The translations under genes and the position numbers were made by a program. A model generated the notes under the pieces. It did not search any database, was not told the origin of the DNA, and was given only the letters and a program-made list of their open reading frames with translations. From IMG/VR virus record IMGVR_UViG_3300025121_000282, positions 186,001 to 250,000 of that record: 64,000 nt of DNA. One strand, 5' to 3'. Shown piece by piece: positions 2,177 through 30,417 of the stretch. Position 1 is the stretch's first letter. Each line of letters opens with the position of its first letter.

Positions 2177-2318
2177 ACACCCGCTCTCGTGTAAGCGCTC
2201 GTGTGCGTGCGTGTCCGAGTGGGTGTGTTCCAACCTTTACAGACTACATTGACTGACAATTCTGACTATTGAACGGGAGAGTGTGTCCACACTTACCTGA
2301 AAGAGGGGGTATAAGTTT

Positions 2319-2570
2319 ATGGCCAAACTTTACGTAGTGTCTACCTGGGGGTTCGATAACGATTCCGTTATCGAGAAAGCCCTGGAAGAACTGAACGTGG
2401 AATTCCTGAAAGTTCCACGGAAAACGGACTGGTCCGACTTCAGAGTGAACCTCGCAGGCGAACACATTGTGGCTCTCTCCGAGAGGTTTGATGTGATGAT
2501 TCACCACGTTACAGGTGACAAAAAGATGATTTTTCTGGATATTAAGGGCAGCAGATTTAAACAGAGGTAA
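2319..2570 (+). CDS. hypothetical protein
   Basis: AGAGGGGG RBS; motif at 2249. Confidence 0.7.
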   Translation: MAKLYVVSTWGFDNDSVIEKALEELNVEFLKVPRKTDWSDFRVNLAGEHIVALSERFDVMIHHVTGDKKMIFLDIKGSRFKQR

Positions 2571-2810
2571 TTAGAACTGTTGCCAAATATTCCCAGGTGC
2601 TGCTTGGGGGAGGGGTGGCGCAGAGGTTGTCCCTTTTAGAACGAAAGTGGCATCTCCTGGAATGATGCGCACGGCATCTCCGTTTGGTGCACGTTCCAGG
2701 TGGAGAACTCTGCTATCGCTCATCTCGTATTGGTCGAAGTCTACCACATCATCTGGTATGATGGGTTCGTTGCCTTCGGGTAGATATTTGATTATAACCT
2801 GTATTTTCAT
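2571..2810 (-). CDS. hypothetical protein
   Basis: 79 aa ORF; GTATAAT about 30 nt upstream. Confidence 0.6.
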   Translation of the reverse strand: MKIQVIIKYLPEGNEPIIPDDVVDFDQYEMSDSRVLHLERAPNGDAVRIIPGDATFVLKGTTSAPPLPQAAPGNIWQQF

Positions 2811-2926
2811 GTAATAATTCTACAATTTACCAAAGCACAGATTATACGCTCTCAGAGGATTGACGATGGGTGGCGAGGGGTGAAGGACCCCAGAAGAGAG
2901 AATCAATCAACTAACTGAGATGGAGA

Positions 2927-3409
2927 ATGAAAATGTCTGGTCGTCGCCCCCGAATCGTCGCTTCTTCCCTCGCCCTTCTCGCCCTTCTCGCCCCCGCGAA
3001 CGCTGCCCCTGAGGAGCAGGGGCAGGAGCCGGTCACGGATGGCCTCCCTGGACCCATCGTGACGCCCGAGCCCGAGCCGGTCCTGGAGCCCGTCTCGCCC
3101 CCCACGGCTGCTCTGCAGCAGAAGGCCCCGGCGCCCCTCTGTCTCTGCGGATGCCTCGTGCAGACCTCCTCGGTTCGTCGCCTCTTCCGCCAGGGCCACG
3201 ACGCCCGCCTCGTGGGCTTCGTCGCTCGTGGCAAGCTGGCCGATGGCTCCGAGCCGAGCCCCGAGCAGACCGCAGCGGCGAACCAGATCCGGAGTGCCAA
3301 GGCTTGGACCGCCGCCCGCCGTCTCCCGCCGGTCCTGGAGGCCGCGACCCAGGAGGAAATCTCGGCCACGGAGCAGGCGGGAGAGGCCACTGCTTCCAAC
3401 GTGGGCTGA
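2927..3409 (+). CDS. family A (CLCGC...RQGHDARLVG putative metal-binding protein), copy 1, signal-peptide-like N-terminus
   Basis: Clear paralogy with 18505..18975 and 26000..26506; promoter motif at 2860. Confidence 0.85.
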   Translation: MKMSGRRPRIVASSLALLALLAPANAAPEEQGQEPVTDGLPGPIVTPEPEPVLEPVSPPTAALQQKAPAPLCLCGCLVQTSSVRRLFRQGHDARLVGFVARGKLADGSEPSPEQTAAANQIRSAKAWTAARRLPPVLEAATQEEISATEQAGEATASNVG

Positions 3410-3439
3410 TTGACCTGTGTCCCCACCGGGTGAAGAATT

Positions 3440-3555
3440 GCAAGACCCGGCTGGAAGTCCTAACTGCAGCGGCCCCTCCCTGTTCATCCTCCCTGTTCAC
3501 AGTGAGGCCCAACATGGACCATCCAATGCTTCGGGGATTCTCAGTCGGGTCTTGT
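3440..3555 (+). ncRNA. candidate sRNA with tandem anti-SD-like CCUCCCUGUUCA seeds
   Basis: Between motifs at 3410 and 3566, no ORF; 14-bp closing stem 3440-3453/3542-3555 with two G-U pairs. Confidence 0.65.
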
Positions 3556-3636
3556 TGTATCTGGGTTGACCCGGTTTGTTTCCATGTGAAGAATTATAAG
3601 GAGGAACTATAAAATGGCCCCAGTTCACCCTGCGAT

Positions 3637-3915
3637 CCAGTACCTCAAAGACTTGAGGCTCTGAGTTGGACTTCACCCGTGCCTCGGTGTGGGTTGACCC
3701 CGACTACTGTCCGCCGAATGATGACAAGACCTTCCGGGTGGACCTCCCCAACAAAGACGTGTTTGTCATCGTTTACCTGCCCGGTGCTGTAGGCCTGAAC
3801 GGCTCGGAAGTGGGCGGGGAATACGGAGATTACGAGGAGTTCGAAAAATGAGCCTCCCCCACAACGACCCCCAAGTTCTCGGCTATTACCACCAGTACCT
3901 CAAAGACTTGAGGCT
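3637..3915 (+). repeat. 24-bp exact direct repeat CCAGTACCTCAAAGACTTGAGGCT (3637-3660, 3892-3915)
   Basis: Read directly; encodes QYLKDLRL in a 16-codon stub (3614-3664) and in ORF 3848. Confidence 0.9.
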
Positions 3916-4090
3916 GGTTCTGGGTGACCTTGAGTTTTCTCCCAACCTTAACGTGGAGAAAATCATCTGGAAGGGTGCGGAAATCGCAGCCTTGGCGGGG
4001 TACAGCGGGGCATCCAACGATGGTGGTGGTTGGAAACACGTTCTGGAGGGGACCCTGAACTTGTTGTACCGGAGATCAATCGTGGGTTGA
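3848..4090 (+). CDS. hypothetical protein
   Basis: Stop is the TGA of a TTGAC half-motif at 4087. Confidence 0.7.
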   Translation: MSLPHNDPQVLGYYHQYLKDLRLVLGDLEFSPNLNVEKIIWKGAEIAALAGYSGASNDGGGWKHVLEGTLNLLYRRSIVG

Positions 4091-4126
4091 CCACAATCCA
4101 CCAGATAACAAATAGGGGTTTTAGTC

Positions 4127-4381
4127 ATGATATCAGTCTCCGCTGATACAGACCCAGATTTCCTTGCGGCAGTAAACCAGATGGTCGCACAAAACATCGC
4201 CGGTCGGGGGGCGCCTGACCGGGTAAAAATAACCATTCAGAACACTAGCGTTTACTTTCAGGGTCCGGTGAGTTTCCTCGATAGTACCGACCTGGAGCGA
4301 CTTTGCGGATGGCCGGTCCGAGTGTGGTACCACGACCTCACTTCGTTTTTGGTTTGTTACCAGAAGCCAAACCGGGATTGA
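4127..4381 (+). CDS. hypothetical protein
   Basis: Stop inside TTGAC at 4378. Confidence 0.7.
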   Translation: MISVSADTDPDFLAAVNQMVAQNIAGRGAPDRVKITIQNTSVYFQGPVSFLDSTDLERLCGWPVRVWYHDLTSFLVCYQKPNRD

Positions 4382-4440
4382 CCACAACACTCTCCAGACG
4401 AAGAGTACCAGACAGAAACCATTATAGGGAGTATTTCAAC

Positions 4441-4650
4441 TTGATTCACCTTTTCTTTCTCGCCATGGCCTCCAGCCTTTCTCCCAACGCCTCCAGCCTC
4501 GACCTGAGTAACATCCCCCACGAGTTTGGGGACACCCGCTACGACGGCAAATGTTGGGAGACGCCCGTCCACCTTATGGACCGTGGTCGCACGATCATTA
4601 TCCGGAAGTGTGAGGGGTGGAAGAACGCAGTGGTCATCCAGTCGAACTGA
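4441..4650 (+). CDS. hypothetical protein (start TTG 4441 or ATG 4465)
   Basis: GGGAG RBS after motif at 4378. Confidence 0.55.
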   Translation: MIHLFFLAMASSLSPNASSLDLSNIPHEFGDTRYDGKCWETPVHLMDRGRTIIIRKCEGWKNAVVIQSN

Positions 4651-4678
4651 TTACAACACCATTCAGGAGGACTCTAAA

Positions 4679-4960
4679 ATGTGGCATCCCATTCAGTGCG
4701 GGCGGCCTCGCCATGAGGCTGACCACCCGTTCACGCTATTCGGTGAACTTGTCAAGTACGGAGACACACTGGAGTTCCTCCTACCTGACGGCCATGTCCA
4801 CCCCCCGGTCATGGTTCATGGGGGAAGTGAAAACATCATGGGCGGCACGACGGAGGTGTATGTCTACCTGACTCTGCACGGTCTGTCTGTCAGATATGGG
4901 TTTGGTGCTCTCGCCCAATGCATGGTGAGTGCACGTAAAGCCACCCCGACTCCCGGTTGA
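4679..4960 (+). CDS. hypothetical protein
   Basis: AGGAGG RBS; stop inside TTGAC at 4957. Confidence 0.75.
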   Translation: MWHPIQCGRPRHEADHPFTLFGELVKYGDTLEFLLPDGHVHPPVMVHGGSENIMGGTTEVYVYLTLHGLSVRYGFGALAQCMVSARKATPTPG

Positions 4961-5014
4961 CTGTAGTCCGTTTCCATGTGAAAACCAAAGAATCCTAACA
5001 GGGGGACTAAGACA

Positions 5015-5248
5015 ATGAGCGAACACATGATCAGCGTCGACATCTACGTGGACCGCAACAGCCATCCTCACAAACCCGACTATCAGTACCACGTTTCGGC
5101 GCACCTCGCTGGAATTCCCCCGTTGGGATACCGAATTGTAGTCCCAGAGGACAACAACGGAGGAACAACTTACAAGTCCTACGTGGTGGTCGAGGGCTCA
5201 ATGCGGACACACGAACCCGTTGTGATTCTGTACTGCCGGGCGGTGTAA
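5015..5248 (+). CDS. hypothetical protein
   Basis: Motif at 4957, GGGGG RBS. Confidence 0.7.
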   Translation: MSEHMISVDIYVDRNSHPHKPDYQYHVSAHLAGIPPLGYRIVVPEDNNGGTTYKSYVVVEGSMRTHEPVVILYCRAV

Positions 5249-5297
5249 GGCAACCCTGGATTGACCGGGACCGAGACAAGACGAAGAATCCCAGAGA

Positions 5298-5385
5298 GCG
5301 AGAGTGGCGAAAAACAGGAAGACGCCCTAGCTTCAGGTGCTAGGGGCTGCAAGGCACTCAGGTTCGAATCCTGACTCTCGTACCA
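5298..5385 (+). tRNA. trnL: tRNA-Leu (CAG)
   Basis: Acceptor GCGAGAG/CTCTCGT+ACCA, anticodon arm CTAGC-TTCAGGT-GCTAG, long variable arm, T arm TCAGG-TTCGAAT-CCTGA; own motif at 5261. Confidence 0.93.
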
Positions 5386-5626
5386 CGGTCCAACAAAGGA
5401 GCACTGTTTAAAAATGACCAAATATAATCTTCTGTTCTACGATTTAATCGACCCGTGCCCGTAGCATCCCTGCCCGCTTCGACTTTTCTAGGGTACATGT
5501 ACGGTGACACGGGAAGGTTCCAATCCCTTTTTGAGTTGTCTAAACCAGTTTAAAGTATGGGTAACAATAAAATGATTCGAGCACCGCCCCGCTGAGGTTA
5601 TGTTAGTTTTTGATAAAAGAAACCAA

Positions 5627-5707
5627 ATGCCCAGACTGGATGACACCGAAACCAAGGTGCTCCTGTTCTGGGCATTGGCGTATTTAGAATACGAAAACCA
5701 TAATTGA
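5627..5707 (+). CDS. 26-aa micro-ORF (MPRLDDTETKVLLFWALAYLEYENHN)
   Basis: Stop inside TTGAC at 5704; weak RBS. Confidence 0.35.
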   Translation: MPRLDDTETKVLLFWALAYLEYENHN

Positions 5708-5751
5708 CTATAATATGTCTCCATGTGAAGAGTCTCATAAGGAGAAACCAA

Positions 5752-6096
5752 ATGACAGACCCTGTACGGTTCCACATTGATGCCATCCCCAGAGATTTCG
5801 CGCCCACAACCGAAACGGTCATCCTGTTTGACGATGTGGCGGAGCTTCACATTGATGTCAGGGACCCGGGGGAACTGTGGAAGGTCTGGTTCAAGGACGA
5901 CACTGATTACCCATACCCCACAGAGCGGATGAGTTACGACCACAGCAACCAAACCTGGACGTGGTGTTTCTACGATTACAACGTCCAGGTTCCATGTGAG
6001 ACTTTCGGAATTTGCGCACAGACCGCCTGGATGACCTACATGTACCTGAGCATCCAGTACAGGAAGGGACGTGAGGGAGTCAAAGCCAAGGATTGA
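5752..6096 (+). CDS. hypothetical protein
   Basis: AAGGAG RBS; stop inside TTGAC at 6093. Confidence 0.8.
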   Translation: MTDPVRFHIDAIPRDFAPTTETVILFDDVAELHIDVRDPGELWKVWFKDDTDYPYPTERMSYDHSNQTWTWCFYDYNVQVPCETFGICAQTAWMTYMYLSIQYRKGREGVKAKD

Positions 6097-6140
6097 CTGC
6101 AATCCGACTCCATGTGAAGAGCAGTAAGGGAGACGCCAAG

Positions 6141-6712: not shown

Positions 6713-6810
6713 TTTTGGCTCTTACATGTGTAGTATCCTGGTGGAATAAAAACACAATTGACCATAGTATGTTCCGGTATGAAGATCTGTATAGGAGGAA
6801 CCAATTAAAA

Positions 6811-7509: not shown

Positions 7510-7815
7510 ATGGCTGACCGATTCATCAACAATGGTTGTCATGCGTGGTTTAGCTATAAGCAGGCAGAGGTGGCTGGGTATCGGGTCCATCAACGACCGG
7601 ATGGGACGACTTATCAGGTGACTACAATCAGTGACACCACAGACCACGGGTGTGGTTGGGATGACATGAAGTACCTCGGTGTCATCGGTCCGGATGATAC
7701 CTCTCTGGGCCAGTACGAGGCCACGGACCCCCTGCAGGCTATGCTCAATCGAGCCGCTGACGAGGCATGGAACGATGCCGCCCTCAACTACTACGAAGAA
7801 ATGGGGTGGGATTGA
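7510..7815 (+). CDS. family B hypothetical (HAWFS...RPDGTTY...HGCGWDDM), copy 1
   Basis: Paralogs at 13446 and 16245; stop inside TTGAC at 7812. Confidence 0.85.
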   Translation: MADRFINNGCHAWFSYKQAEVAGYRVHQRPDGTTYQVTTISDTTDHGCGWDDMKYLGVIGPDDTSLGQYEATDPLQAMLNRAADEAWNDAALNYYEEMGWD

Positions 7816-7869
7816 CCTATTCGGTGCCTGTGTGAATGGACATGGTTGGCCACAAAGGAGCCCACTAAA

Positions 7870-8190: not shown

Positions 8191-8273
8191 CACCTTTTAG
8201 TCCTGACGGTTGACCGATCGTAGCCTCAGGTGAAGAATTATAGACACCAATCGACTGCAACAAGGAAAATTGA

Positions 8274-8669: not shown

Positions 8670-9098
8670 ATGAAAATCTGGCTCAGCTATTCCACCCTCT
8701 GTCACTCCCTCGAAGCGGCGATCACCGACCCCAAGGTCGTTCTCCCCGAGCCGGGTGACTGTTTCTTCTTCGGGTGTCACGAGATTGTGGTTGGGTCCTG
8801 CCCCTACGCCGGGCACACAGGCCGCGAGTGGCCGCCTGGGGTCCTGTTTGCGGCACAGAAGCTGTTCATTACGGCCAAAAGCGTGAGACGTGCTCTCTGT
8901 TGTGGCGATCTTCGAGATGAGGGCAAAGATCTATGGGAAGAACTGGCAAAACTTACGGGGGCCCGCGACCGGTTCATGAGTGAGTTGGACCGGATTTTTG
9001 AGGATCGGTGCCGCGGGCAGGATTACTGTTATCCCACTGCGGTGGAAGTCCTGGAAAAGATGGGCATTGTGGGTGTGAGTCACACGACCCGCACTTGA
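8670..9098 (+). CDS. hypothetical protein
   Basis: Stop inside TTGAC at 9095. Confidence 0.75.
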   Translation: MKIWLSYSTLCHSLEAAITDPKVVLPEPGDCFFFGCHEIVVGSCPYAGHTGREWPPGVLFAAQKLFITAKSVRRALCCGDLRDEGKDLWEELAKLTGARDRFMSELDRIFEDRCRGQDYCYPTAVEVLEKMGIVGVSHTTRT

Positions 9099-9140
9099 CT
9101 AGTGCCATTGCCTGCTGAATGTACCCTAGGAGAATCAATC

Positions 9141-9347: not shown

Positions 9348-9403
9348 AGGATTGACCAGGGTACTAACAGACTGAAGAACAACAGACATTCAAGGAGCAA
9401 CTT

Positions 9404-10319: not shown

Positions 10320-10868
10320 TTAAATGCTACTGTAAGCCCTTAACACTTCTGCAACGTCGTCATACACTTCTGGTTCAGTCGCAACAGTAGCGCAGCAATT
10401 CACCGACCTGACCACTCTGGGCTGGAAGATTTCTACCAGGGTCCTGGTCTGCTCGTTCACAGCGTCCCTCAAAGTCCTAAAAATTCCCACACCACCCTTG
10501 ATTTTGTAATCGGTCTGCTTGTCGTCCAACGCAAGCTTTGCGCCCGCCTTGGTTATAGCCTTGTCTATAATTTTCCAAATTGCAGTCCGAGTCAACTTAC
10601 CCCAATGAAGGATAGACTTGAAAAGTAGGGATTTGGCTTCCAACTTATTCTTGCGTCCGTATTCCAGAAGGCGAGTCTGTAGGCTGGCTTTGACTTTGTC
10701 TGGCATTTGACAATCTCGCACCAGAGCCTGAGCTTGCCCATAAGTCAAACCTGAAATTTGCTTATCTGAGGTAATTCTCAGGTTTGCGCATAGGATGAGC
10801 AGTAACTTATCACGGTTTGAGTGGGCAACTTCTATCATGGTTTTGAAAAGTTTGGCTACAGTGCTCAT
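10320..10868 (-). CDS. basic, AT-rich hypothetical protein (possible late/virion protein)
   Basis: AGGAG RBS; TGTATAAT upstream (10900-10907). Confidence 0.8.
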   Translation of the reverse strand: MSTVAKLFKTMIEVAHSNRDKLLLILCANLRITSDKQISGLTYGQAQALVRDCQMPDKVKASLQTRLLEYGRKNKLEAKSLLFKSILHWGKLTRTAIWKIIDKAITKAGAKLALDDKQTDYKIKGGVGIFRTLRDAVNEQTRTLVEIFQPRVVRSVNCCATVATEPEVYDDVAEVLRAYSSI

Positions 10869-10974
10869 TTTGCAACTCTCCTGTTTACTTCTTGCTACTA
10901 TTATACAATGAAAAGACTATTGACTCGAATTGTTTCCATACGAATAACCACACACACCAACAAGGAGATTAAAA

Positions 10975-11642: not shown

Positions 11643-11696
11643 TTATTAACGTAGATCGTTTCCATGTGAAGCACCAACAAAGGAGACTGAAAGCCA

Positions 11697-12690: not shown

Positions 12691-12924
12691 ATGAAGGTCT
12701 CCGAACTCATCCAGTGGCTGGCCACTCAAGACCAGGAGGCCACTGTTGAGGTTGTCGTACATATGGATCGTGGTAGTTACTACGAACAGGGTGGCACGGC
12801 TACGACCGAGGAATTCACCGGCGAACTGTCCGAATACACCGATTTCCGAGAAAACCAATTTGTCACCCCAGACCAGCCTCATTTCAACCGGCGATTCCTG
12901 CTTCTGGGTGTGTACAAAGGTTAA
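12691..12924 (+). CDS. hypothetical protein (MKVSELIQWL)
   Basis: GGAGG RBS; stop TAA inside TTAAC at 12921. Confidence 0.75.
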   Translation: MKVSELIQWLATQDQEATVEVVVHMDRGSYYEQGGTATTEEFTGELSEYTDFRENQFVTPDQPHFNRRFLLLGVYKG

Positions 12925-12965
12925 CTACAATCTGTTTCCATTTGAAAAGAAGGGTGCAACTTACA

Positions 12966-14199: not shown

Positions 14200-14334
14200 C
14201 TATACTGGTGCAGCCCCCACCGGTAGTGGAACATGCATCTACATGGTTTGCTCCCGCCTGAGAGAGTGATTGACCCGATCTTTTCCCGTGCGAATACCTA
14301 TACCAATCAACCAATTATAATAAGGACACCATCA

Positions 14335-14751: not shown

Positions 14752-14805
14752 CCGATTGACCGCTTTCGTTTCCATGTGAAGAATCCCAGAAGGAGAGAAT
14801 TCAAA

Positions 14806-16081: not shown

Positions 16082-16244
16082 TCAGGTCCAACCCACGATG
16101 GAAACAGAATGTGGAATCGATGATTTCTGGACGCTGGGTGTGTGGGTGAAATCGGAAACACGGGCTGACGTTACCCCCACACAATTGACCACCCTACTCT
16201 ACGGGCGAATTACATCCTAGACCCCAACAAGAAGATAAGAACAA

Positions 16245-17503: not shown

Positions 17504-17616
17504 CGTATTTGAAATCTATGAACAAATAAATTAACCAATCCTTTCGTGGGGTGAAGAACTGTACACAGTGGGCTCGGTGCCACACCCGAACCTTCTTTCC
17601 ACGACTGATGCACCTA

Positions 17617-17667: not shown

Positions 17668-18504
17668 ACCCGAATTCGCCCGTTGCGGTCCGCCTGTCAC
17701 CAGTACGTGGCATAGCTGCCCCCTCCCATCTGTACTCCCACGTGAATGCGGCTCGCACTCGCAACCGCCTATCAAACCCACACACCACTCAATTGCGCGC
17801 CCGCATCAAGTACCCACAATTTCGCAAACAGCATACACGAACACGGATGTACACGGAATCGTGTATGCTGTGCTTTCGTGTATGCCAGAACGGATGTACT
17901 GCATCACGCTCTCGCCAACACATGCAAGTGCTCACGTGAACGTACGGGCTGTCACATGTGGGCCCACACACGAGTGTGCTCAGTGTTCAAGAAAATTTGT
18001 CCACAATATCTCGTTCTGATTTCTGAAATTTGTCCGCACTGTTCCCACTCTCCCAAGACAACCACCCCAGCTTTGGAAGCCCCTCAGTTTAGAACTATTC
18101 ACCCCCTGACACCCCTCGAACCAAAGCTATTTACACGTCCACACCTAGAAACTTTCAACTTCTGGTGTGTTTATTTATACCTATGGTTCTAAAAAGCGGT
18201 CTATTATAACAAGGTGTCACCCTTTGGCCAAACCAGAGCCACAGGTTTGGGCCTGCCTTGGGTTTGGGGCTTGGGGGGGGGGAGTTGTTTTTCACCCAGT
18301 AGGGAGTGCTAGATAACCCGTATTTCGGGAGTCTCAAACCGTTGACTACCCATTGACGGAGCCCTGTAGGGGTGAAATAACTCAGAGACGGAGATTTTCT
18401 TTCCCGCCTCGAAGAGACTCCCCCCCCCCGACTAAGGATTGACGAGGCGGGATGGGGAGTGAAGAATCCCAGAGACAATCAACCGACTGAACAGGAGATT
18501 CCCA

Positions 18505-18982: not shown

Positions 18983-19007
18983 TTCGCCTCCCGGACGGAG
19001 CGGTCAA
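18983..19007 (-). promoter_or_regulatory. antisense promoter motif TTGAC-N15-GCGAA pointing into 18505..18975
   Basis: Exact motif on the - strand just after the stop codon. Confidence 0.65.
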
Positions 19008-19066
19008 TCTTTGGGTGTCCGAGCCCGGGATTGACCGCCCAAGGACCGAGGTGAATCATCCCGAGA

Positions 19067-19231
19067 TTGGCTGTTCAGAAATCGGTTCGAAACATTGAGG
19101 ATTGGCAACCACCCGGTACGTTCCGGGAAAGGGGTCAATCTTTAGGAGGTGGTTTGTCAGGACCACCAACCCAGCACATAGGCTGACACCTTTTGTGATT
19201 GGGTGCTTCGGACCGGTTTCTGAACAGCCAA
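19067..19231 (+). ncRNA. candidate structured ncRNA 1 (25-bp closing helix, multibranch core)
   Basis: 19067-19091 pairs with 19207-19231, its only non-Watson-Crick pairs being two G-U; own motif at 19031; no ORF. Confidence 0.7.
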
Positions 19232-19269
19232 ATGAGGATTGACCGCTCTGGTCTCCGAGGCGAAGAGTT

Positions 19270-19340: not shown

Positions 19341-19378
19341 TGTCAATTGACGAGAGTCACCCTCAGGTGAAGTGTCCT

Positions 19379-19553: not shown

Positions 19554-19609
19554 AACCTGGATTGACCGATTTTGTTTCCATGCGAAGAAAGACAAGGAGG
19601 AACTCAAAA

Positions 19610-19843
19610 ATGTCCAGATTCAAACCCTCGGTTTCGCAGCTGATGGAGGTCCAGCACCGGGTGGACACTCAGAATCCGTCGCAAGTGGCACTCTTCTGCC
19701 GGGTGATTGGTGCCTCGATGCTTGCCAATGCTGCTGCCTCGATTCCCTCCGTCTGGAGAGCGGCTCGGGCCCAGTTGGCCATTGAGGCCGCCACGCTCAA
19801 TGTGGTCTTGGGCATCGACCTCGAAGTGGTTTGGTGCGATTGA
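19610..19843 (+). CDS. hypothetical protein
   Basis: AAGGAGG RBS; stop inside TTGAC at 19840. Confidence 0.8.
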   Translation: MSRFKPSVSQLMEVQHRVDTQNPSQVALFCRVIGASMLANAAASIPSVWRAARAQLAIEAATLNVVLGIDLEVVWCD

Positions 19844-19900
19844 CTGATTTCGTTTCCATGTGAAGAACGACACACAATCGACAGGGAGGGGCTAAAAAAG

Positions 19901-20759: not shown

Positions 20760-21065
20760 ATGTCCCGCATCGACGCCGAATTCAAGTCCGTTGTCGCTTT
20801 CGCCAGTTACAAGCTCGACAACGACGACCCCACCTTCACGGGTGCCGATTTGCAAACCCTCAACCGGGTGACGCTGACATCGGTCCCGAACATCAAGCTC
20901 CAATTGCTCGAACTTGGCCTGACCCAGGCCATTCCCGAAAAGGCCTCCGTGGTCCGAGGGTTCACCGCGAACTCGCACGACCGGTGGGCCGGCAACCCCT
21001 GCGCGGGTGGGTCGGGTGGGTCGTCGATCCAGAAGTTCGCAGGGAATGCGGCCGGCTGGAATTGA
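20760..21065 (+). CDS. hypothetical protein
   Basis: AGGAGG RBS; stop inside TTGAC at 21062. Confidence 0.8.
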   Translation: MSRIDAEFKSVVAFASYKLDNDDPTFTGADLQTLNRVTLTSVPNIKLQLLELGLTQAIPEKASVVRGFTANSHDRWAGNPCAGGSGGSSIQKFAGNAAGWN

Positions 21066-21117
21066 CCTGAAGTCCTGTGGGGCGAAAGTCCACACACCAA
21101 ACCAGGGAGTTTTCAGT

Positions 21118-21387
21118 ATGTCGCGAGGCAACTCACAAGTCAATCGAAACTACGAATGCGCCACAAAGATGGCCGAGTGTGCTGATTTCGTGGTTGAGCA
21201 CTTGGGCTCACACGCACACTTTCAGGTGCGATGGGGGCAATTCTGGGCGACGGTCCGCCTCGACAGAAATGGGGATGTCTCGTGCGGGAGTTTCAATCGA
21301 AACTTTTCGCCTTGGGGCTCATCCGCCTCTGTTTTTTCCGAATTGCTGAGACAGTGGAAGTCCGAGGGTGAACCCAAGGCTGATTGA
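21118..21387 (+). CDS. hypothetical protein
   Basis: GGGAG RBS; stop inside TTGAC at 21384. Confidence 0.75.
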   Translation: MSRGNSQVNRNYECATKMAECADFVVEHLGSHAHFQVRWGQFWATVRLDRNGDVSCGSFNRNFSPWGSSASVFSELLRQWKSEGEPKAD

Positions 21388-21447
21388 CCCGTTTCCATTT
21401 CGGACGAAAAGACTACGAGACACCAGCCAACAAAGGAGTAGTTTCCA

Positions 21448-21726
21448 ATGTCCCCACCCTTTCTGATCGATTTTCAGGCCATGCAAGACCACCTGAACTC
21501 AAGGGAGATGGTACTCGCTGCCTGTTCCATCAATCGGGGTCAGCACGCAGGACAGCGGCTACGGCTCGTGGCGCGTTTCCTGGTGGAAGACCCCGGTGAT
21601 AAGGACACGATTTTCTACTATGTCACCCGCACGTTCCAGGGTGATAAGGTGTACGAGGATGGGCCAAGCCCACGTCTGGCTCTCTCGGTGTCGCTGTTCA
21701 ACAGCATCTCCCTGGGCGAAGGTTGA
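21448..21726 (+). CDS. hypothetical protein
   Basis: AAGGAG RBS; stop inside TTGAC at 21723. Confidence 0.8.
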   Translation: MSPPFLIDFQAMQDHLNSREMVLAACSINRGQHAGQRLRLVARFLVEDPGDKDTIFYYVTRTFQGDKVYEDGPSPRLALSVSLFNSISLGEG

Positions 21727-21777
21727 CCCGCCTCGTTTCCATGTGAAGACCAGCACACAATCAAGGAGGAAACAGTA

Positions 21778-22035: not shown

Positions 22036-22098
22036 GTGGGAATTGACTGAGGTCCGTTTCCACCTGAATTGTGACACACTGAGAAATGGAGACTGAAA

Positions 22099-22323
22099 GT
22101 GGCCAACGTTCCCTACAAGTTTCGTGGTCTTCCCTGCAACATCACGACCGACGACAAGCTCTGGTGCATCGTCGGTCGCTTCGTCAATGAACGGGGTTGC
22201 GGTGGGGGCGCCTTGGAGTGGTGCTACGATGAGCAGGACGCCTCGGCTGTTCTGGCTCAGATGGTTCAGGACAGCCAGTTTCGAAACCTGCAAGCCATCA
22301 CGTATAAGCAGTTCTGCGCTTAA
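22099..22323 (+). CDS. hypothetical protein
   Basis: GGAG RBS; stop inside TTAAC at 22320. Confidence 0.75.
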   Translation: MANVPYKFRGLPCNITTDDKLWCIVGRFVNERGCGGGALEWCYDEQDASAVLAQMVQDSQFRNLQAITYKQFCA

Positions 22324-22373
22324 CCCACGCCGTTTCCATGTGAACAGTCACGCACTGGAAAAGGAGACCGAAA

Positions 22374-22562: not shown

Positions 22563-22868
22563 ATGTACAAGAGTTTGGCAGAGTTTCTAGCCTCAACGAA
22601 TTTGCTGGAGAGGTTGACCAACATCGACAGGGCCCTGAATGTAAACGGGGCCCTGTGCAACCACCATGACGGTGTGGTCTTCAAAATCAACTTCGGCCCC
22701 TATACGGCGAGTTGCATGTGGCTGGATACCGTGTCGGACAACACCTGGAATGTCCAACTCTCCTACCTGGATTCAGACCACAAATACCACCCGTTCGGTG
22801 GCAGCGTTTCAACCTCTGAGTTCAAGATCGTAAAGGGTGTAGCCGAGATCTGCGGACTCGGCAATTGA
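22563..22868 (+). CDS. hypothetical protein
   Basis: AGGAG RBS; stop inside TTGAC at 22865. Confidence 0.8.
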   Translation: MYKSLAEFLASTNLLERLTNIDRALNVNGALCNHHDGVVFKINFGPYTASCMWLDTVSDNTWNVQLSYLDSDHKYHPFGGSVSTSEFKIVKGVAEICGLGN

Positions 22869-23245
22869 CGGGGTCTTCTCCGGGTGAAGAGTCCCCGAGG
22901 CGCTTTTGCCTCCCTTGTCCTCTGGGGGTTTTAACCATGCCTTCTTCCGATCTCTCCTTTTCCTTTTCCGGCCGTCCCTACCGCGCCCGCCTTCTCTCCG
23001 AGCCCGGCAAGGGTGACGCGCTGGTCTTCGGTCTCAGCCTCAACCCGAAACTGGACAAGGTCTGGGTTCTGGTGCAACGTGACGGCGCGTGGGTGCGCCC
23101 CACGGGTGAAAAGCCCTCGGCTCTGGGGCGGGCCGCAGTCGCAGCGATCGGTTGATCGGCGTTTCCGATTGACGGGGTCTTCTCCGGGTGAAGAGTCCCC
23201 GAGGCGCTTTTGCCTCCCTTGTCCTCTGGGGGTTTTAACCATGCC
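22864..23245 (+). repeat. 78-bp exact direct repeat (22864-22941, 23168-23245) comprising promoter, leader and ATG
   Basis: Read directly base for base. Confidence 0.95.
22937..23155 (+). CDS. hypothetical protein (MPSSDLSF)
   Basis: ATG inside repeat copy 1. Confidence 0.7.
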   Translation: MPSSDLSFSFSGRPYRARLLSEPGKGDALVFGLSLNPKLDKVWVLVQRDGAWVRPTGEKPSALGRAAVAAIG

Positions 23246-23540: not shown

Positions 23541-23592
23541 GGGATTGACTGAAATCTGTTTCCATGTGAATTGTGACAAGGAGGAACTCAAA

Positions 23593-23820: not shown

Positions 23821-23865
23821 ATCGATTCAGCGGGATTGACCGCAGTTTTTTCGTGTGAATTACAA

Positions 23866-24050: not shown

Positions 24051-24051
24051 A

Positions 24052-24090: not shown

Positions 24091-24318
24091 TGTCAAACGT
24101 GTGGACACCTGCTACGCCTGTCAACGCGTCCACGCTGCATCCGCACAACCCACTCAGACGTACCCCCACGGGAGACATTCGAGCCGCACAATCCATTGTA
24201 ACCCGTTTCCACATAATAGTAAGTTGTGGTGGGTGGCAGGTTGTCCGAGGCATTTGAAAACTCACTGTTGAATCTTCCACCTGAGATTGACCCGTTTCCA
24301 TCTCGGGTGAAAAACAAC

Positions 24319-24714: not shown

Positions 24715-24806
24715 TTCAGCCATAACTCCCTGGTGACAAGTTGCAATTGACCGAACTTTCGTTCAGGCGAAAGTTCTGGAGAGACAACCAACCACGAAGA
24801 TTCCAA

Positions 24807-25304: not shown

Positions 25305-25364
25305 TTGACGGAGCCTCCTGAGGGGCGAAGAGTCCCAGACCAACAACCAAGAGGAGACCGCACG

Positions 25365-25716: not shown

Positions 25717-25741
25717 TTCGTCCTCGACTGAGAGTCGTCAA
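25717..25741 (-). promoter_or_regulatory. antisense promoter motif TTGAC-N15-ACGAA pointing into 25365..25709
   Basis: Exact motif on the - strand just after the stop codon. Confidence 0.65.
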
Positions 25742-25999
25742 GCTGTGCCCAGTCTGCCGAGAGGTGGCCTGGGCACAGCCGTACCTGAGTTCTGAGAGAT
25801 TCGTCCTCACAGGCATCCGGCTCTTCGGGCTGATTGGCCGATTGACGGAGGGTCGCAGCGGGTGAAAAAGGATAAGAGGACGAGATAGTTTCGTTTCGGT
25901 CCTCCTGCCCCGGTCCCCCGACTAAGGATTGACGGACCCGGGGCCGAGACGAAGAATCCCAGAGACAGCGAATCAACCCAAGACGAAGGAGATCATCCC

Positions 26000-26506
26000 A
26001 TGGCCACCAAGTCCACCAAGAGCACCACCAAGTCCCCCCGCGCCACCCGCAAGCAGGCCGAGGTCCTCGACGCCCTCGGTTTCCCGGTCCCCGCCATCAT
26101 GGAGGCCGCTCCCGAGCCCGTCGTGGCGCCCGAGCCCGAAATCCCGGTGGTCGTGGCCGTCAAGGCCGAAAAGGCGGTCCGAGTCGTCCCCGAGGCCCCG
26201 CTCTGCCTCTGCGGCTGCCTCGTGCAGACGAGCAGCCACCTGCGGACCTTCCGCCAGGGCCATGACGCCCGGCTGGTGGGCTTCCTGGCCGCCAACGAGC
26301 GGGCGGTCGCGAAGCAGAAGGAGGCCCCTCACAACCTCTCGGAGGCGCAGATCACCGCCGCCTGCCAGATCCGGAACCGCAAGGCGGAGGCCGCCGCCGC
26401 GAAGCTCCCTTCGACCTCGTCGAAGCCCGTGCTGGAGGCCGCTCCTGCGGAGCAGAACGAAGCCGAGCAGAGCACGGACGAGCAGGACGCCGCGAACGCC
26501 GGCTGA
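26000..26506 (+). CDS. family A (CLCGC...GHDAR) protein, copy 3
   Basis: Paralogy; motif at 25929; AAGGAG RBS. Confidence 0.88.
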   Translation: MATKSTKSTTKSPRATRKQAEVLDALGFPVPAIMEAAPEPVVAPEPEIPVVVAVKAEKAVRVVPEAPLCLCGCLVQTSSHLRTFRQGHDARLVGFLAANERAVAKQKEAPHNLSEAQITAACQIRNRKAEAAAAKLPSTSSKPVLEAAPAEQNEAEQSTDEQDAANAG

Positions 26507-26513: not shown

Positions 26514-26538
26514 TTCGTCTGACCGACCCGCCCGTCAA
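26514..26538 (-). promoter_or_regulatory. antisense promoter motif TTGAC-N15-ACGAA pointing into 26000..26506
   Basis: Exact motif on the - strand just after the stop codon. Confidence 0.65.
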
Positions 26539-26629
26539 GCTTTCCGAGCCGATTGACCGCAGCCTCTGAGGGGCGAAGGAATCCCGAGGGCAGTTTCGCC
26601 CCCCCCCCACCAACAGAGGACCATTTACA

Positions 26630-26962: not shown

Positions 26963-26999
26963 GGGGATTGACCGAATCGCACGATGGGTGAAAGAACAT

Positions 27000-28128: not shown

Positions 28129-28316
28129 GCGTTGAGGTTCTGGGTTTCTACCCCCAGGTTGAAACCACCACCCGCAAGAATCGATGCGCCCCGAAAAGAA
28201 AGAATCGCACGATGAGTCCCCTGGTGATTGTCCATCACGGGTTATCGTGCGATTGACCCGTCCAACCCGAGATTGAAGTAATCCATGGCACACACATCCC
28301 ACAAAAGGTCCTTGTA

Positions 28317-28541
28317 ATGACAACCCCGGCAGGGCCCATGGCGACAGAGTACGTGGCACACGCTGAAACTTGTCCGCGATGTGAGACTGTAGACCGTGGA
28401 GTTGTGTCTGATTCCCGATTAAGACCAGGGTCCAGATGTCCAGTAGGTAAAATACTGGTCAAAGCAGCAGTGAGGGAAGATGTCCGTTTAGGCAGGTGCC
28501 ATCCCAACGGGCAAAGCAAGAGTTTTGTGTCCCCCAAGTAG
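28317..28541 (+). CDS. small Cys-containing hypothetical protein
   Basis: CPRC...CPVG; motif at 28253. Confidence 0.45.
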   Translation: MTTPAGPMATEYVAHAETCPRCETVDRGVVSDSRLRPGSRCPVGKILVKAAVREDVRLGRCHPNGQSKSFVSPK

Positions 28542-28921
28542 TTCTACTATCCGAAGTCGTGGTCAATCACAGACCATAATCGTGCGATTCCAGAAGGTTG
28601 TAATTGACGAATCGCATGATGGGGTGAAAAATAGTGGGAGTCCGAGAAATTACAACAGGGCAAAGGTGGATAATTGACAGAGCACGGGGAAGGTGGAAAT
28701 ACCCCACGGAAGGAAACGGGGGAGTCCGAAATATACCCCATTTCCCGAAAGGTCGGGGGCCGTCAAATGTATATATCGATATATATTTCCAGAGGTATAT
28801 ATCATCTTGCGCGTGCTCCAATGTACCTGGACGAATATTCGGATACAAACGTTTGATAACTTGTTAGTGCTGTTTTGGTCGCACCTACGTTGTTTCGTTG
28901 TTCCATTAAAAACAGGAGTGT

Positions 28922-29149
28922 GTGACCATGCTCGTCTACCTACTCATCAATGAAAAAGCCACTACCTACCTAGACAAGTGGCGGCTATTCGCTTCTAAAC
29001 AGGAGTGCTTAGCCGCTGCCCGAAAGCTGGGTTATGGTTCGTCCCCGTTCGGAGAATTCGGTTCTCTGAGTGACGAGCCTGGAAAAATTACCCAGGAGAT
29101 GGGTTGTAACCGACTGGCTTGGATATCACCATGGTTCCTGTCATACTAG
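28922..29149 (+). CDS. hypothetical protein
   Basis: AGGAG RBS. Confidence 0.6.
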   Translation: MTMLVYLLINEKATTYLDKWRLFASKQECLAAARKLGYGSSPFGEFGSLSDEPGKITQEMGCNRLAWISPWFLSY

Positions 29150-29305
29150 ACATACCATAGTGAATATACTGTATTGCAGTATGCACCCGGGTTGGTTGTT
29201 ATCTCCTCAAGGTTGTAGTACTATTTTGGTTTTGGAAATTATTTATATCTGGGCTGCAGTAGGTACAAATATTCGGTCAGGATAGAAATTGGAGATTGTA
29301 ATTAG

Positions 29306-29533
29306 ATGCTTGCACTTGGCTTATTTTTAATCACCATCGGCTCAGCTGGTATTGCCATAATTTTGTTTGAGGCTGTAATCGAACTCAGCAAAATGAAACG
29401 CAGAGTCTTCAGCAGCGATCAGTGGGTCGACTTGTTTTCTCAAAACATTATCCTGTTGACAGTAAGTGCTTTGGCTGCTTTTTCCGTCCTTGTGGGGGTT
29501 GTTTTGACCCTCGTTGGTTTGCTCAAAAACTGA
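29306..29533 (+). CDS. two-TM membrane protein
   Basis: GGAG RBS; two hydrophobic helices. Confidence 0.7.
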   Translation: MLALGLFLITIGSAGIAIILFEAVIELSKMKRRVFSSDQWVDLFSQNIILLTVSALAAFSVLVGVVLTLVGLLKN

Positions 29534-29546
29534 GGAGCGTAATGCC

Positions 29547-30338
29547 ATGTCTGAATTGGTAGCCCTTTCTAAAACCTTGCCTCGTCACCCGGGATACGTG
29601 TCCTTCGTGAACGAATCTAGATTTTTACCCGGCAGAAGCCGAATACTCCGTGAGCAAGGAGTCGTTGTCTTTGTCCGTGAATCAGACGGGACGGGAGGAC
29701 TAGAATTCCCGTTCTGGTGTAATTTCCAAAAACTAAAAGACTTGGGTCATACCAAGGGCTGGGTTCCAAAATGGTTTGTCCCCGCGGGCAGAGGACGCGC
29801 CTTGCTTCGGGTCAAACCAACCGAGTACAAAACAATGCCTCTCGGAGAATTCAAGTACAAGACGTGCGAGCCCAACTATCAGTATCAGGACGAGGTAATC
29901 ATGAAAGACTTCTTCCGGCACGCAGAGGGCATCCGGGACGGCTTGTTTGATAACAGGACCTCGTCCGACTTCAAGGGTGAGGAAAACAATTTCAACGACA
30001 CGTTGAGAGCCATTTATGCCAAAATAGCTTCACGTGATTTCCCGTTCGAGGTCGGTGACTGGGTCTATGTCCCGTTGAACGGCGGAGAACTTCAGACCAA
30101 AGCCCAGATTCAGCTGACGAAATATGACTTTGACCCGAATTGTTGTGTTGTGAGACTCGAACCATTTCTTGCGGAAGACGCCACTGGGAAATCCAAACTT
30201 CTCACCAGCGGGGGTGTCCAGGTTATTAGAAAAAGCTTGGTTACGCAACGGGCTTTTCCTCCGGTCCCGTACGAATCCAAGCGAGGAATCGGCGCCAAAT
30301 ACGACCCGACTCCTTATATCAATCTCGATTGGGAATAA
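29547..30338 (+). CDS. hypothetical protein
   Basis: GAGGAG RBS; long ORF. Confidence 0.75.
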   Translation: MSELVALSKTLPRHPGYVSFVNESRFLPGRSRILREQGVVVFVRESDGTGGLEFPFWCNFQKLKDLGHTKGWVPKWFVPAGRGRALLRVKPTEYKTMPLGEFKYKTCEPNYQYQDEVIMKDFFRHAEGIRDGLFDNRTSSDFKGEENNFNDTLRAIYAKIASRDFPFEVGDWVYVPLNGGELQTKAQIQLTKYDFDPNCCVVRLEPFLAEDATGKSKLLTSGGVQVIRKSLVTQRAFPPVPYESKRGIGAKYDPTPYINLDWE

Positions 30339-30417
30339 GTACAAGGCGCAGTAATTATAATTGACTACAAGCTCGGTCTACTGAAATACCCCCACAACCA
30401 AAGGAATAGAGTTTACA

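What the first reader, a model, noticed from the sequence alone, without database searches (positions are those of the whole stretch)
2249..30385. Array of about 57 promoter-delimited single-gene cassettes, with stop codons supplied by the next promoter
TT(G/A)AC-N14-16-nYGAA occurs at 2249, 2860, 3410, 3566, 4378, 4957, 5261, 5704, 6093, 6758, 7070, 7812, 8210, 9095, 9352, 10920, 11283, 11646, 12377, 12921, 13388, 14270, 14756, 16185, 17531, 18439, 19031, 19239, 19347, 19562, 19840, 20170, 20686, 21062, 21384, 21723, 22043, 22320, 22516, 22865, 23169, 23545, 23836, 24287, 24747, 25305, 25842, 25929, 26553, 26968, 27534, 28253, 28604 and 30361, plus a few variants. About 20 ORFs end on the TGA/TAA inside the motif (e.g. 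4381, 4960, 6096, 7815, 11286, 19843, 20689, 21065, 21387, 21726, 22868). The unit [promoter-RBS-ORF-stop] parallels integron cassettes, where the stop lies in the attC R'' box, but these repeats are not attC palindromes. Cargo includes proteins, a tRNA and structured RNAs. Inference: a gene-shuffling platform in which the promoter doubles as the recombination joint. SPO1-type early promoter arrays are the known precedent, but stop-codon fusion at this density is unusual.
Basis: partly seen in the sequence, partly recalled or inferred. Interest (0 to 1): 0.88.

Follow-up and report, generated by a model that had tools for sequence, protein, structure and literature searches.

The report
Dense early-promoter gene array, jumbo phage
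A 28-kb stretch of an uncultivated 315-kb groundwater phage holds about 55 copies of one promoter, each driving one or a few tiny genes of unknown function, and related phages show that these promoter-flanked units are often gained, lost and swapped, much as in T4-type phages.

Summary
Fifty-five copies of gaTTGACc-N15-17-YGAAgaa lie on the + strand between 2249 and 30385. For the N16 form alone there are 40 matches against 1.4 expected by chance, and there are essentially none in 30.4-64 kb. Each copy sits about 33 nt upstream of a Shine-Dalgarno site and start codon, a tRNA-Leu, or a structured RNA.

- **Cargo:** 36 of 55 units hold one ORF, 14 hold 2-5, and 5 hold RNA only.
- **Stops in the motif:** 15 well-supported ORFs (up to 19) stop on the TGA/TAA inside TTGAC/TTAAC. 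This is only modestly above what tight packing predicts (17 of 33 junctions in that frame, p=0.02).
- **Origin:** the window is positions 186001-250000 of a 314,886-bp groundwater phage contig.
- **Relatives:** two diverged relatives carry the same motif. One is collinear with the window over 18.8 kb and differs by 19 cassette-scale indels or replacements.
- **Breakpoints:** half fall in the promoter/leader zone (25% expected), and three "empty-site" promoters are clear hybrids. Other, recent deletions have breakpoints inside ORFs.
- **What is absent:** no hairpin, no terminator enrichment and no recombinase.

Best reading: this is an early-gene (ORFan) hyperplastic region whose repeated promoters also serve as short homology for modular shuffling. 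It resembles T4-type PeSLs without the stem-loop. It is not an integron-like system.

The parts
2249..30385 (+). Whole array: 55 co-oriented promoter-like motifs and about 75 small ORFs, 1 tRNA and several structured RNAs; GC 52-58% against 42-47% downstream
2249..2273 (+). promoter motif (first of array)
2860..2884 (+). promoter motif
3410..3434 (+). promoter motif; TGA of ORF 2927-3409 abuts it; cargo is a 122-nt structured RNA
3566..3590 (+). promoter motif (GTTTCCATGTGAA spacer class)
4378..4402 (+). promoter motif; weak ORF 4127-4381 stops in its TTGAC
4957..4982 (+). promoter motif; ORF 4679-4960 stops in its TTGAC
5261..5285 (+). promoter motif driving tRNA-Leu
5298..5385 (+). tRNA-Leu(CAG); starts 13 nt after the YGAA of promoter 5261
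5704..5729 (+). promoter motif; short ORF 5627-5707 stops in its TTGAC
6093..6118 (+). promoter motif; ORF 5752-6096 stops in its TTGAC
6758..6783 (+). promoter motif; right edge of the SNP-dense patch in variant L093
7070..7094 (+). promoter motif (TTAAC form)
7812..7836 (+). promoter motif; ORF 7510-7815 stops in its TTGAC
8210..8234 (+). promoter motif
9095..9119 (+). promoter motif; ORF 8670-9098 stops in its TTGAC
9352..9376 (+). promoter motif
10920..10944 (+). promoter motif; left parent of hybrid promoter P1133 in L136
11283..11308 (+). promoter motif; ORF 10975-11286 stops in its TTGAC
11646..11670 (+). promoter motif (TTAAC); right parent of hybrid promoter P1133 in L136
12377..12402 (+). 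promoter motif
12921..12946 (+). promoter motif (TTAAC); ORF 12691-12924 stops on its TAA
13388..13412 (+). promoter motif (TTAAC)
14270..14294 (+). promoter motif
14756..14780 (+). promoter motif
16185..16209 (+). promoter motif
17531..17555 (+). promoter motif (TTAAC)
18439..18463 (+). promoter motif
19031..19055 (+). promoter motif driving a structured RNA
19065..19238 (+). 174-nt structured non-coding RNA: MFE -93.8 kcal/mol, z -10.6. Conserved in L134 with 63 pairs, 5 of them compensatory and none broken. No Rfam match
19239..19264 (+). promoter motif driving a 73-nt hairpin RNA (19274-19346, z -5.7)
19347..19371 (+). promoter motif; 181-nt non-coding cargo (z -2.4)
19562..19586 (+). promoter motif
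19840..19864 (+). promoter motif; ORF 19610-19843 stops in its TTGAC; hybrid of L141 P16955 and P17352
20170..20194 (+). promoter motif (TTAAC); ORF 19901-20173 stops on its TAA; hybrid of L134 P3069 and P3914
20686..20710 (+). promoter motif; ORF 20237-20689 stops in its TTGAC
21062..21086 (+). promoter motif; ORF 20760-21065 stops in its TTGAC
21384..21408 (+). promoter motif; ORF 21118-21387 stops in its TTGAC
21723..21747 (+). promoter motif; ORF 21448-21726 stops in its TTGAC
22043..22068 (+). promoter motif
22320..22344 (+). promoter motif (TTAAC); ORF 22099-22323 stops on its TAA
22516..22540 (+). promoter motif
22864..22941 (+). promoter 22865 plus 72-nt leader plus ATG. It is 100% identical to 23168-23245 but precedes an unrelated ORF. 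ORF 22563-22868 stops in its TTGAC
23168..23245 (+). second exact copy of the promoter+leader+ATG module (promoter 23169)
23545..23570 (+). promoter motif
23836..23859 (+). promoter motif (15-nt spacing)
24287..24311 (+). promoter motif; ATG only 7 nt after YGAA (possibly leaderless)
24747..24771 (+). promoter motif
25305..25329 (+). promoter motif; TGA of ORF 25086-25304 abuts it
25842..25866 (+). promoter motif; 53-nt hairpin cargo before the next promoter
25929..25953 (+). promoter motif
26553..26577 (+). promoter motif
26968..26992 (+). promoter motif; ATG 7 nt after YGAA
27534..27559 (+). promoter motif
28253..28277 (+). promoter motif
28604..28628 (+). promoter motif
30361..30385 (+). 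promoter motif (last of array)
18983..19007 (-). antisense copy of the motif; its predicted start falls on the stop codon of ORF 18505-18975
25717..25741 (-). antisense copy of the motif, just after the stop of ORF 25365-25709
26514..26538 (-). antisense copy of the motif, just after the stop of ORF 26000-26506 (paralogue of 18505-18975)
10320..10868 (-). the only supported minus-strand gene inside the array; conserved in L141 (8964-9497, -)

Best explanation
Region 2249-30385 is the main early-gene (ORFan, probably host-takeover and counter-defence) hyperplastic region of an uncultivated ~315-kb groundwater jumbo myovirus.

**Architecture.** It carries 55 co-oriented copies of one promoter type. 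Each has a -35-like gaTTGACc, 15-17 nt of spacer, and a non-canonical -10-like YGAAgaa; a conserved CA-n-R lies 7-10 nt further on and is taken as the start site. About 33 nt after the YGAA comes a Shine-Dalgarno site and start codon for one (36 of 55) or several small ORFs, or an RNA cargo. There are no intrinsic terminators, so transcription probably accumulates along the array (inferred).

**Stops in the promoter.** Genes are packed so tightly that the upstream ORF ends within 25 nt of the next -35. Where the frame allows, it ends on the TGA/TAA that TTGAC/TTAAC happens to contain. This is mainly compaction, with a modest excess. The excess is probably because ORFs in the other two frames would have to be translated through the promoter (inferred).

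**Recombination.** The repeated promoter+leader sequences also act as short homology tracts. Ordinary homologous or short-homology recombination at these tracts deletes, duplicates and swaps cassettes and regulatory modules (shown by comparison with relatives; the mechanism is inferred). This is not a site-specific system. Illegitimate deletions elsewhere also occur and are filtered by selection.

**Open point.** Which RNA polymerase and sigma factor reads the motif is unknown.
For: **Motif enrichment, strand and regional restriction:**

**Promoter geometry:**
- Conserved -35-like and -10-like blocks and a conserved CA-n-R 7-10 nt downstream.
- Median 33 nt from YGAA to the start codon, with a Shine-Dalgarno site.
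- The tRNA-Leu begins 13 nt after the YGAA.
- At orthologous sites in the relatives, TTGAC and YGAA are kept while the spacers diverge.

**A general promoter class of this phage:** the same motif precedes NADAR- and Macro-domain genes and others elsewhere on the contig.

**ORFan content:** 74 array proteins give 0 Pfam and 0 PADLOC hits.

**No terminator enrichment:** 15 found against 21.7 expected, and 13 against 10.6.

**Stop statistics:** in the window, 15 of 33 tight junctions stop at +1 and the frame class is 17/33, p=0.023, with none at the second TGA. In L141 it is 12 of 21 at +1, frame class 13/21, p=0.007; in L134 it is 6 of 10.

**Shuffling:**
- L134 and L135 (about 80% nt identity) and L141 (67-86% nt, collinear over 18.8 kb) carry 18 and 34 copies of the same motif, all on the + strand.
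- There are 19 events of at least 150 bp. Nineteen of 38 breakpoints fall within -10..+65 of a promoter start, against 25% expected.
- Hybrid promoters sit at three empty sites.
- An exact 78-nt promoter+leader+ATG module precedes two unrelated ORFs.
- In variant L093 a cassette-sized SNP-dense patch runs from 6160 to 6769, beginning about 30 nt after promoter 6093's motif and ending inside promoter 6758.
Against: - No transcription data exist; promoter function is inferred from geometry alone.
- The -10-like element lacks the conserved T at -7 of sigma-70 promoters, so the polymerase or sigma factor is unknown.
- Nearly all non-coding space in the array is promoter plus leader. Selection for whole-gene indels would therefore by itself concentrate surviving breakpoints there.
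- Half of the breakpoints are not at promoters.
- Between the near-identical relatives L134 and L136, one of three recent events has both ends inside ORFs and another runs from a start codon into an ORF.
- The junctions in the relatives are partly orthologous to those in the window, so the stop-frame statistics are not independent.
Confidence: 0.7

Rival explanations
1. Compaction plus selection only. The motif is a promoter, but it plays no part in recombination. Indels arise by illegitimate recombination anywhere, and only those that remove or add whole functional units persist, which gives an apparent cassette pattern.
For: Of three events between the 97-99% identical relatives L134 and L136, one has both ends inside ORFs at a 12-nt imperfect microhomology and one runs from an ATG into an ORF. 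Nineteen of 38 window-versus-L141 breakpoints lie outside the promoter zone, several at promoter-less gene boundaries such as 15541/15839. A 37-bp frameshifting deletion sits inside gene 7870-8190 in variant L056.
Against: Three empty-site promoters are clean hybrids whose crossover lies inside or at the end of the promoter. A 78-nt regulatory module is duplicated exactly, with sharp borders. Promoter+leader modules are exchanged between subfamilies in front of orthologous genes.
Confidence: 0.25
2. A dedicated, integron-like cassette platform. A site-specific recombinase recognises the motif, excises and inserts [promoter-ORF] units as circles, and the stop codon is built into the site as in the attC R'' box.
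For: Units are regular and one-directional. Stops lie inside the motif. Cassette-scale indels have junctions in the motif.
Against: Mirrored positions in the motif show no hairpin or covariation: pairing equals that of permuted controls and the mean folding z is -0.15. None of the 74 array proteins or the flanking genes hits a recombinase family. Crossover points vary (after TTGAC, after YGAA, in the leader, at the ATG), and many breakpoints lie elsewhere. Every unit has its own promoter instead of sharing one Pc.
Confidence: 0.04
3. The repeat is not a promoter but another cis element, such as an operator for a phage regulator, a replication or packaging iteron, or an RNA-level signal.
For: The -10-like part is non-canonical. 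Fifteen copies share a conserved spacer (GTTTCCATGTGAA) that could be a protein-binding site.
Against: The motif has a strict orientation with the genes. Its distance to the Shine-Dalgarno site and ATG is fixed, and it sits just before a tRNA and structured RNAs. It has a two-block architecture with 15-17 nt spacing and a conserved purine at the expected start. No RNA structure is present.
Confidence: 0.05

Closest known systems
PeSLs (promoter-early stem-loops) in the hyperplastic regions of T4-type phages (Arbiol et al. 2010, PMC2839356; Comeau et al. 2014, PMC4122927)
   Same: About 50 repeated strong early-promoter motifs per genome, concentrated in regions of small ORFans. They lie between the stop of one gene and the Shine-Dalgarno site and start of the next. 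Indels and replacements between relatives have junctions in the motif, so the regulatory cassette doubles as a recombination substrate.
   Different: There is no stem-loop or terminator component here. The -10 is not sigma-70 consensus, and there is no AT-rich upstream element. The stop codon is often inside the -35 rather than upstream. The phage is a ~315-kb jumbo phage with no detected T4 relationship. Mini-circles were not tested.
SPO1 host-takeover module (26 small early genes in a 12.4-kb terminal region with strong promoters and ribosome-binding sites; PMC6873191, citing Stewart et al. 1998)
   Same: A cluster of small early genes of mostly unknown function, each or each few behind a strong promoter and Shine-Dalgarno site, all in one orientation.
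   Different: The array here is about twice as long, with about 55 promoters. The promoter consensus differs. The position relative to the genome ends is unknown. No function has been tested.
Integron cassette arrays (attC sites, IntI, one Pc promoter); from general knowledge
   Same: One-directional array of short single-gene units, with the unit boundary next to or overlapping the stop codon.
   Different: No attC-like imperfect palindrome, no integrase, a promoter in every unit, and variable crossover points.
Cyanophage 'ORFanage' region lost by spontaneous deletion (PMC4503421; title and abstract only seen)
   Same: A dispensable block of novel small genes in a large myovirus that is prone to deletion.
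   Different: No repeated promoter joints are known to me for that case. I did not read it in detail.

Membership tests
PeSL (T4-type mobile regulatory cassette) | Repeated early promoter matching the host sigma-70 consensus (-35 and -10) | tested here: inconclusive
   The -35 (TTGAC(C)) and the 16-17 nt spacing fit. The best -10 reading is AAGAAT/GAAGAA, with no conserved T at -7. Host and sigma factor are unknown.
PeSL (T4-type mobile regulatory cassette) | Stable stem-loop (terminator/attenuator) within or next to the promoter | tested here: not met
   Mirrored pairing equals that of permuted controls and the mean folding z is -0.15. Terminator-like sites are not enriched: 15 against 21.7, and 13 against 10.6. 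A few leaders carry a 5-6 bp hairpin.
PeSL (T4-type mobile regulatory cassette) | Concentrated in hyperplastic regions, upstream of ORFans | tested here: met
   Fifty-five copies in 28 kb. All 74 proteins lack Pfam hits. There are 19 indel events against a relative over 18.8 kb.
PeSL (T4-type mobile regulatory cassette) | Indel and replacement junctions between relatives lie in the motif | tested here: met
   Three hybrid promoters. Nineteen of 38 breakpoints are in the promoter/leader zone against 25% expected. However, other events lie outside it.
PeSL (T4-type mobile regulatory cassette) | Cassette mini-circles formed by exchange between nearby motifs | not testable with these tools
   This needs reads or PCR.
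Integron | attC sites: imperfect inverted repeats that fold as single strands | tested here: not met
Integron | Adjacent IntI tyrosine recombinase | tested here: not met
   No recombinase domain was found in the array or in the flanking ORFs that were searched. The rest of the 315-kb genome was not examined.
Integron | Promoterless cassettes expressed from one common promoter | tested here: not met
   Each unit has its own promoter motif.
SPO1-type host-takeover module | Cluster of small early genes with strong promoters and ribosome-binding sites | tested here: met
   Met at sequence level only. Timing of expression was not tested.
SPO1-type host-takeover module | Location in the terminal redundancy; products shut off host processes | not testable with these tools
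   The array lies at contig positions ~188-216 kb of 314,886. Genome termini and protein functions are unknown.

The most novel reading that the evidence does not exclude
The promoter+leader module may be a portable recombination joint in a jumbo-phage lineage unrelated to T4. It would continually exchange ORFan cassettes, possibly through circular intermediates, with a separate GC-rich gene pool. That would account for the array's very different codon usage (GC3 70% against 43% in the rest of the same genome), its own tRNA-Leu(CAG), and the roughly one cassette-scale event per kb seen between relatives. The promoter itself would be read by an unusual sigma factor or polymerase that recognises YGAA in place of a TATAAT-type -10.
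Probability: 0.25. Interest if true: 0.7.

Novelty: new variant of a known kind. Interest (0 to 1): 0.5.

Why it matters
It extends promoter-mediated modular shuffling beyond T4-type phages. Until now that mechanism was documented there, with composite promoter-terminator motifs. Here it appears in an uncultivated jumbo phage, and a bare promoter+leader with no stem-loop seems to be enough. The region offers about 75 early ORFans and several promoter-driven structured RNAs as candidates for host-takeover or counter-defence functions. It defines a well-sampled non-canonical promoter consensus (55 + 34 + 18 copies) that could identify the polymerase or sigma factor, or the host. It also shows an extreme early-versus-rest split in codon usage within one genome. 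Finally, the eye-catching "stop codon supplied by the next promoter" turns out to be largely a by-product of compaction, because TTGAC contains TGA.

Tried and rejected
- **Phage database:** a megablast of 20 kb of the array against 50,697 phage records found nothing.
- **Promoter-pattern scans:** scans of IMG/VR and JGI metagenomes returned mostly single chance hits. L003, L043, L092 and L099 turned out to be unrelated. The only true hits were the source contig and variants at >=98.8% identity.
- **Protein-seeded searches:** single-protein and paralogue-alignment searches of IMG/VR found only the source contig, or distant motif-level hits.
- **Same-population contigs:** contigs carrying P0001 were essentially clonal and uninformative.
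- **Hairpin/attC idea:** rejected by the permutation and folding controls.
- **RNA families:** Rfam gave no match, at gathering threshold over the whole window or at E<=1 over 18950-19650.
- **Protein families:** Pfam and PADLOC on all 74 array proteins gave nothing. PHROGs matched only families of unknown function, for the three CLCGC...FRQGHDAR paralogues.
- **Host inference:** the phage adenylosuccinate lyase has best hits at 45-51% identity, mostly Alphaproteobacteria. That is too distant to name a host.
- **A coincidence:** the 263-aa gene in L134 is not homologous to the window's 263-aa gene 29547-30338.
- **Gene calling:** 'longest open frame' misled in this GC-rich region. I replaced it with a codon-usage score, which was cross-checked against external gene calls.

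Full report

Yes. The spacing is 16 nt in 41 copies, 17 in 11 and 15 in 3. The tool's own count for the fixed N16 form is 40 matches in the window against 1.38 +/- 1.10 in shuffles. Of these, 37 lie on the + strand between 2249 and 30385 and 3 on the - strand. A position-weight scan gives 45 + strand sites at score >=12 (0.25 expected) and essentially nothing in 30.4-64 kb. It adds one variant at 25030.

It reads g-a-TTGAC-c, a variable spacer, c-R-G-G-Y-GAA-g-a-a, then C-A-n-R 7-10 nt after the GAA. Fifteen copies share the spacer ending GTTTCCATGTGAA.

**What the window is**

The window is positions 186001-250000 of a 314,886-bp contig (Ga0208375_1000024, also IMGVR_UViG_3300025121_000282) from a groundwater metagenome series, PRJNA292723. 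Downstream of the array lie:
- a nucleoside hydrolase, an M16 peptidase, ThyX, an amidase, adenylosuccinate lyase and a GroEL;
- on the other strand, large baseplate-like proteins only distantly similar to Bacillus phage G.

It is therefore a novel jumbo myovirus-like phage. Nothing similar is in the phage collection at the DNA level.

**Anatomy of the array**

A codon-usage score trained on ORFs with a start codon and Shine-Dalgarno site just after a motif recovered a clean set of + strand genes. This set agrees with independent gene calls attached to public assemblies.
- The median distance from YGAA to the start codon is 33 nt, and the median promoter-to-promoter distance is 406 bp.
- Thirty-six of 55 intervals hold one ORF, 14 hold 2-5 and 5 hold none.
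- The tRNA-Leu(CAG) begins 13 nt after the YGAA of motif 5261.
- Three intervals without ORFs encode strongly structured RNAs. The 174-nt cargo of motif 19031 folds to -93.8 kcal/mol (z -10.6). It is conserved in a relative with 63 pairs, 5 of them compensatory and none broken. The 73-nt and 122-nt cargos of motifs 19239 and 3410 have z of -5.7 and -4.0. None matches Rfam.
- Intrinsic-terminator-like sites are not enriched.
- The motif has no internal hairpin: mirrored positions pair no more than in permuted controls.
- None of the 74 array proteins hits Pfam or PADLOC.
- There are five small paralogue families.

The geometry fits a promoter: two blocks at sigma-70-like spacing, a conserved purine at the expected start, and a fixed distance to the ribosome-binding site or to an RNA 5' end. 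The -10-like block, however, is not TATAAT-like, so the polymerase or sigma factor is unknown. The same motif precedes genes elsewhere on the contig at ~149-154 kb and ~178-179 kb, including NADAR- and Macro-domain proteins. It is thus a general promoter class of this phage that is densest here.

**Stop codons in the promoter**

TTGAC contains TGA and TTAAC contains TAA. Thirty-three supported genes end within 30 nt of the next motif. Of these:
- 15 end on that internal stop;
- the rest end 3-25 nt upstream;
- none ends on the second TGA in GTGAA.

If genes simply abut promoters in random frames, one third should fall in the frame that meets this stop. The observed figure is 17 of 33 (one-sided p=0.023). 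Two relatives give 13 of 21 (p=0.007) and 6 of 10, although their junctions are partly orthologous to those in the window. The feature is therefore real, but it is mostly what compaction predicts, with a modest excess. My inference is that ORFs in the other two frames would have to be translated across the promoter, which seems to be avoided.

**Comparison with relatives**

A homologue of gene 20237-20689 at 82% amino-acid identity led to Logan contigs L134 (5.8 kb) and L135. A gene on L134 then led to L136/L141, an 18.7-kb contig. These carry the same motif: 18 and 34 copies, all on the + strand. At orthologous sites TTGAC and YGAA are conserved while the spacers diverge.

L141 is collinear with window 3191-22029 at 67-86% identity and differs by 19 events of at least 150 bp.
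- Nineteen of the 38 breakpoints lie between -10 and +65 of a promoter start in at least one genome, against 25% expected (p~0.001).
- By my manual reading of the table, most of the remainder lie at promoter-less gene boundaries and about a quarter lie inside ORFs.

Three cases are clean.
- Window promoter 20170 has the upstream flank of L134 promoter 3069 and the leader of L134 promoter 3914. In L134 these two promoters bracket a 263-aa gene.
- L136 promoter 1133 joins the flank of window promoter 10920 to the leader of window promoter 11646, across two window cassettes.
- Window promoter 19840 joins L141 promoters 16955 and 17352 across one cassette.

Four further observations point the same way.
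- Promoter+leader modules are swapped in front of orthologous genes.
- One cassette gene (the 10975-11286 family) sits at a different place in L141.
- Within the window, a 78-nt promoter+leader+ATG module is duplicated exactly in front of two unrelated ORFs.
- A 98.8%-identical variant (L093) concentrates 40 of its 49 SNPs between 6160 and 6769, a patch that begins about 30 nt after promoter 6093's motif and ends inside promoter 6758.

**Limits on that conclusion**

L134 and L136 are 97-99% identical and differ by three recent events:
- a promoter+leader swap ending 6 nt before the ATG;
- a 575-bp deletion running from a start codon into an ORF;
- a 1709-bp deletion with both ends inside ORFs at a 12-nt imperfect microhomology, which fuses two genes.

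A 37-bp frameshifting deletion also sits inside a gene in another variant. Recombination is therefore not confined to the motif. Because nearly all non-coding DNA here is promoter plus leader, selection alone would also enrich surviving breakpoints there. I found no recombinase and no site-like structure.

**Conclusion**

The array works like the PeSL-rich hyperplastic regions of T4-type phages (PMC2839356, PMC4122927) and like early host-takeover modules such as that of SPO1 (PMC6873191). It fails the PeSL stem-loop criterion and all integron criteria. I file it as a new variant of a known kind: a bare promoter+leader acting as the repeated joint, in a jumbo phage.

**An unexplained extra**

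Array genes have GC3 of 70.5% and use CTG+CTC for 71% of leucines. Twenty genes in 31-64 kb of the same window have GC3 of 42.8% and 26%. The array also encodes tRNA-Leu(CAG). Possible explanations are early genes tuned to a GC-rich host, a separate gene pool, or biased gene conversion in a recombination-prone region. All three are speculation. The weak alphaproteobacterial affinity of the phage adenylosuccinate lyase (45-51% identity) is compatible with a GC-rich host but does not establish one.

Noticed in passing
window 2249-28000 versus 31000-64000: There is an extreme codon-usage split within one genome. Array genes have GC3 of 70.5%, with Leu CTG+CTC at 71% and TTA at 0%. Twenty downstream genes have GC3 of 42.8%, CTG+CTC at 26% and TTA at 19%. 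The array also carries tRNA-Leu(CAG).
   Followed up: partly
window 18983-19007, 25717-25741, 26514-26538 (minus strand): Three good copies of the promoter motif lie on the opposite strand. Each is placed so that its predicted start falls on the stop codon of the upstream + strand gene (18505-18975, 25365-25709, 26000-26506). Two of these genes are paralogues. The copies are candidates for antisense transcripts. No minus-strand copies occur in L141.
   Followed up: partly
window 19065-19238; also 19274-19346 and 3444-3565: These are promoter-driven structured RNAs with no Rfam family. The first has a ~25-bp closing stem and three inner hairpins, and is supported by 5 compensatory pairs against L134.
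   Followed up: partly
window 17617-17667 and 24043-24091; L136 6901-6974: A repeated element consists of a poly-C tract (21, 9 and 10 C) followed by a GC-rich hairpin that overlaps a possible start codon and Shine-Dalgarno site of small ORFs. The homopolymer length differs between copies.
   Followed up: no
window 24287, 26968, 27534: At three promoters the first start codon lies only 5-7 nt after YGAA, that is, at the predicted transcription start. These may be leaderless mRNAs.
   Followed up: no
window 2927-3409, 18505-18975, 26000-26506: A paralogous family has an invariant CLCGC...FRQGHDARLVG core. It matches only PHROG families of unknown function, and short motif-level matches occur in other viral contigs.
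   Followed up: partly
L024 349-1440 (minus strand); source contig ~149-158 kb: A TnpB/Cas12f-like (OrfB_IS605) gene lies in the same phage genome. It is next to NADAR- and Macro-domain genes that sit behind the same promoter type.
   Followed up: no
window 7898-7934 (variant L056); window ~1384-1395 (variant L019): Population variants carry a 37-bp frameshifting deletion inside array gene 7870-8190 and a 12-bp deletion upstream of the array. This suggests that the array gene is dispensable.
   Followed up: no
window 20720-20740, 22898-22915, 26587-26602; L134 ~4470-4490: Several leaders begin with a similar 5-6 bp hairpin (GAGRGC, loop, GCYCTC) right at the predicted transcript start, followed by a pyrimidine-rich run. 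It could be a 5' stabiliser or an attenuator for read-through transcripts.
   Followed up: no
window 32797-46785: The phage encodes a nucleoside hydrolase, an M16 peptidase, ThyX, an amidase, an adenylosuccinate lyase and a full-length GroEL-type chaperonin.
   Followed up: no
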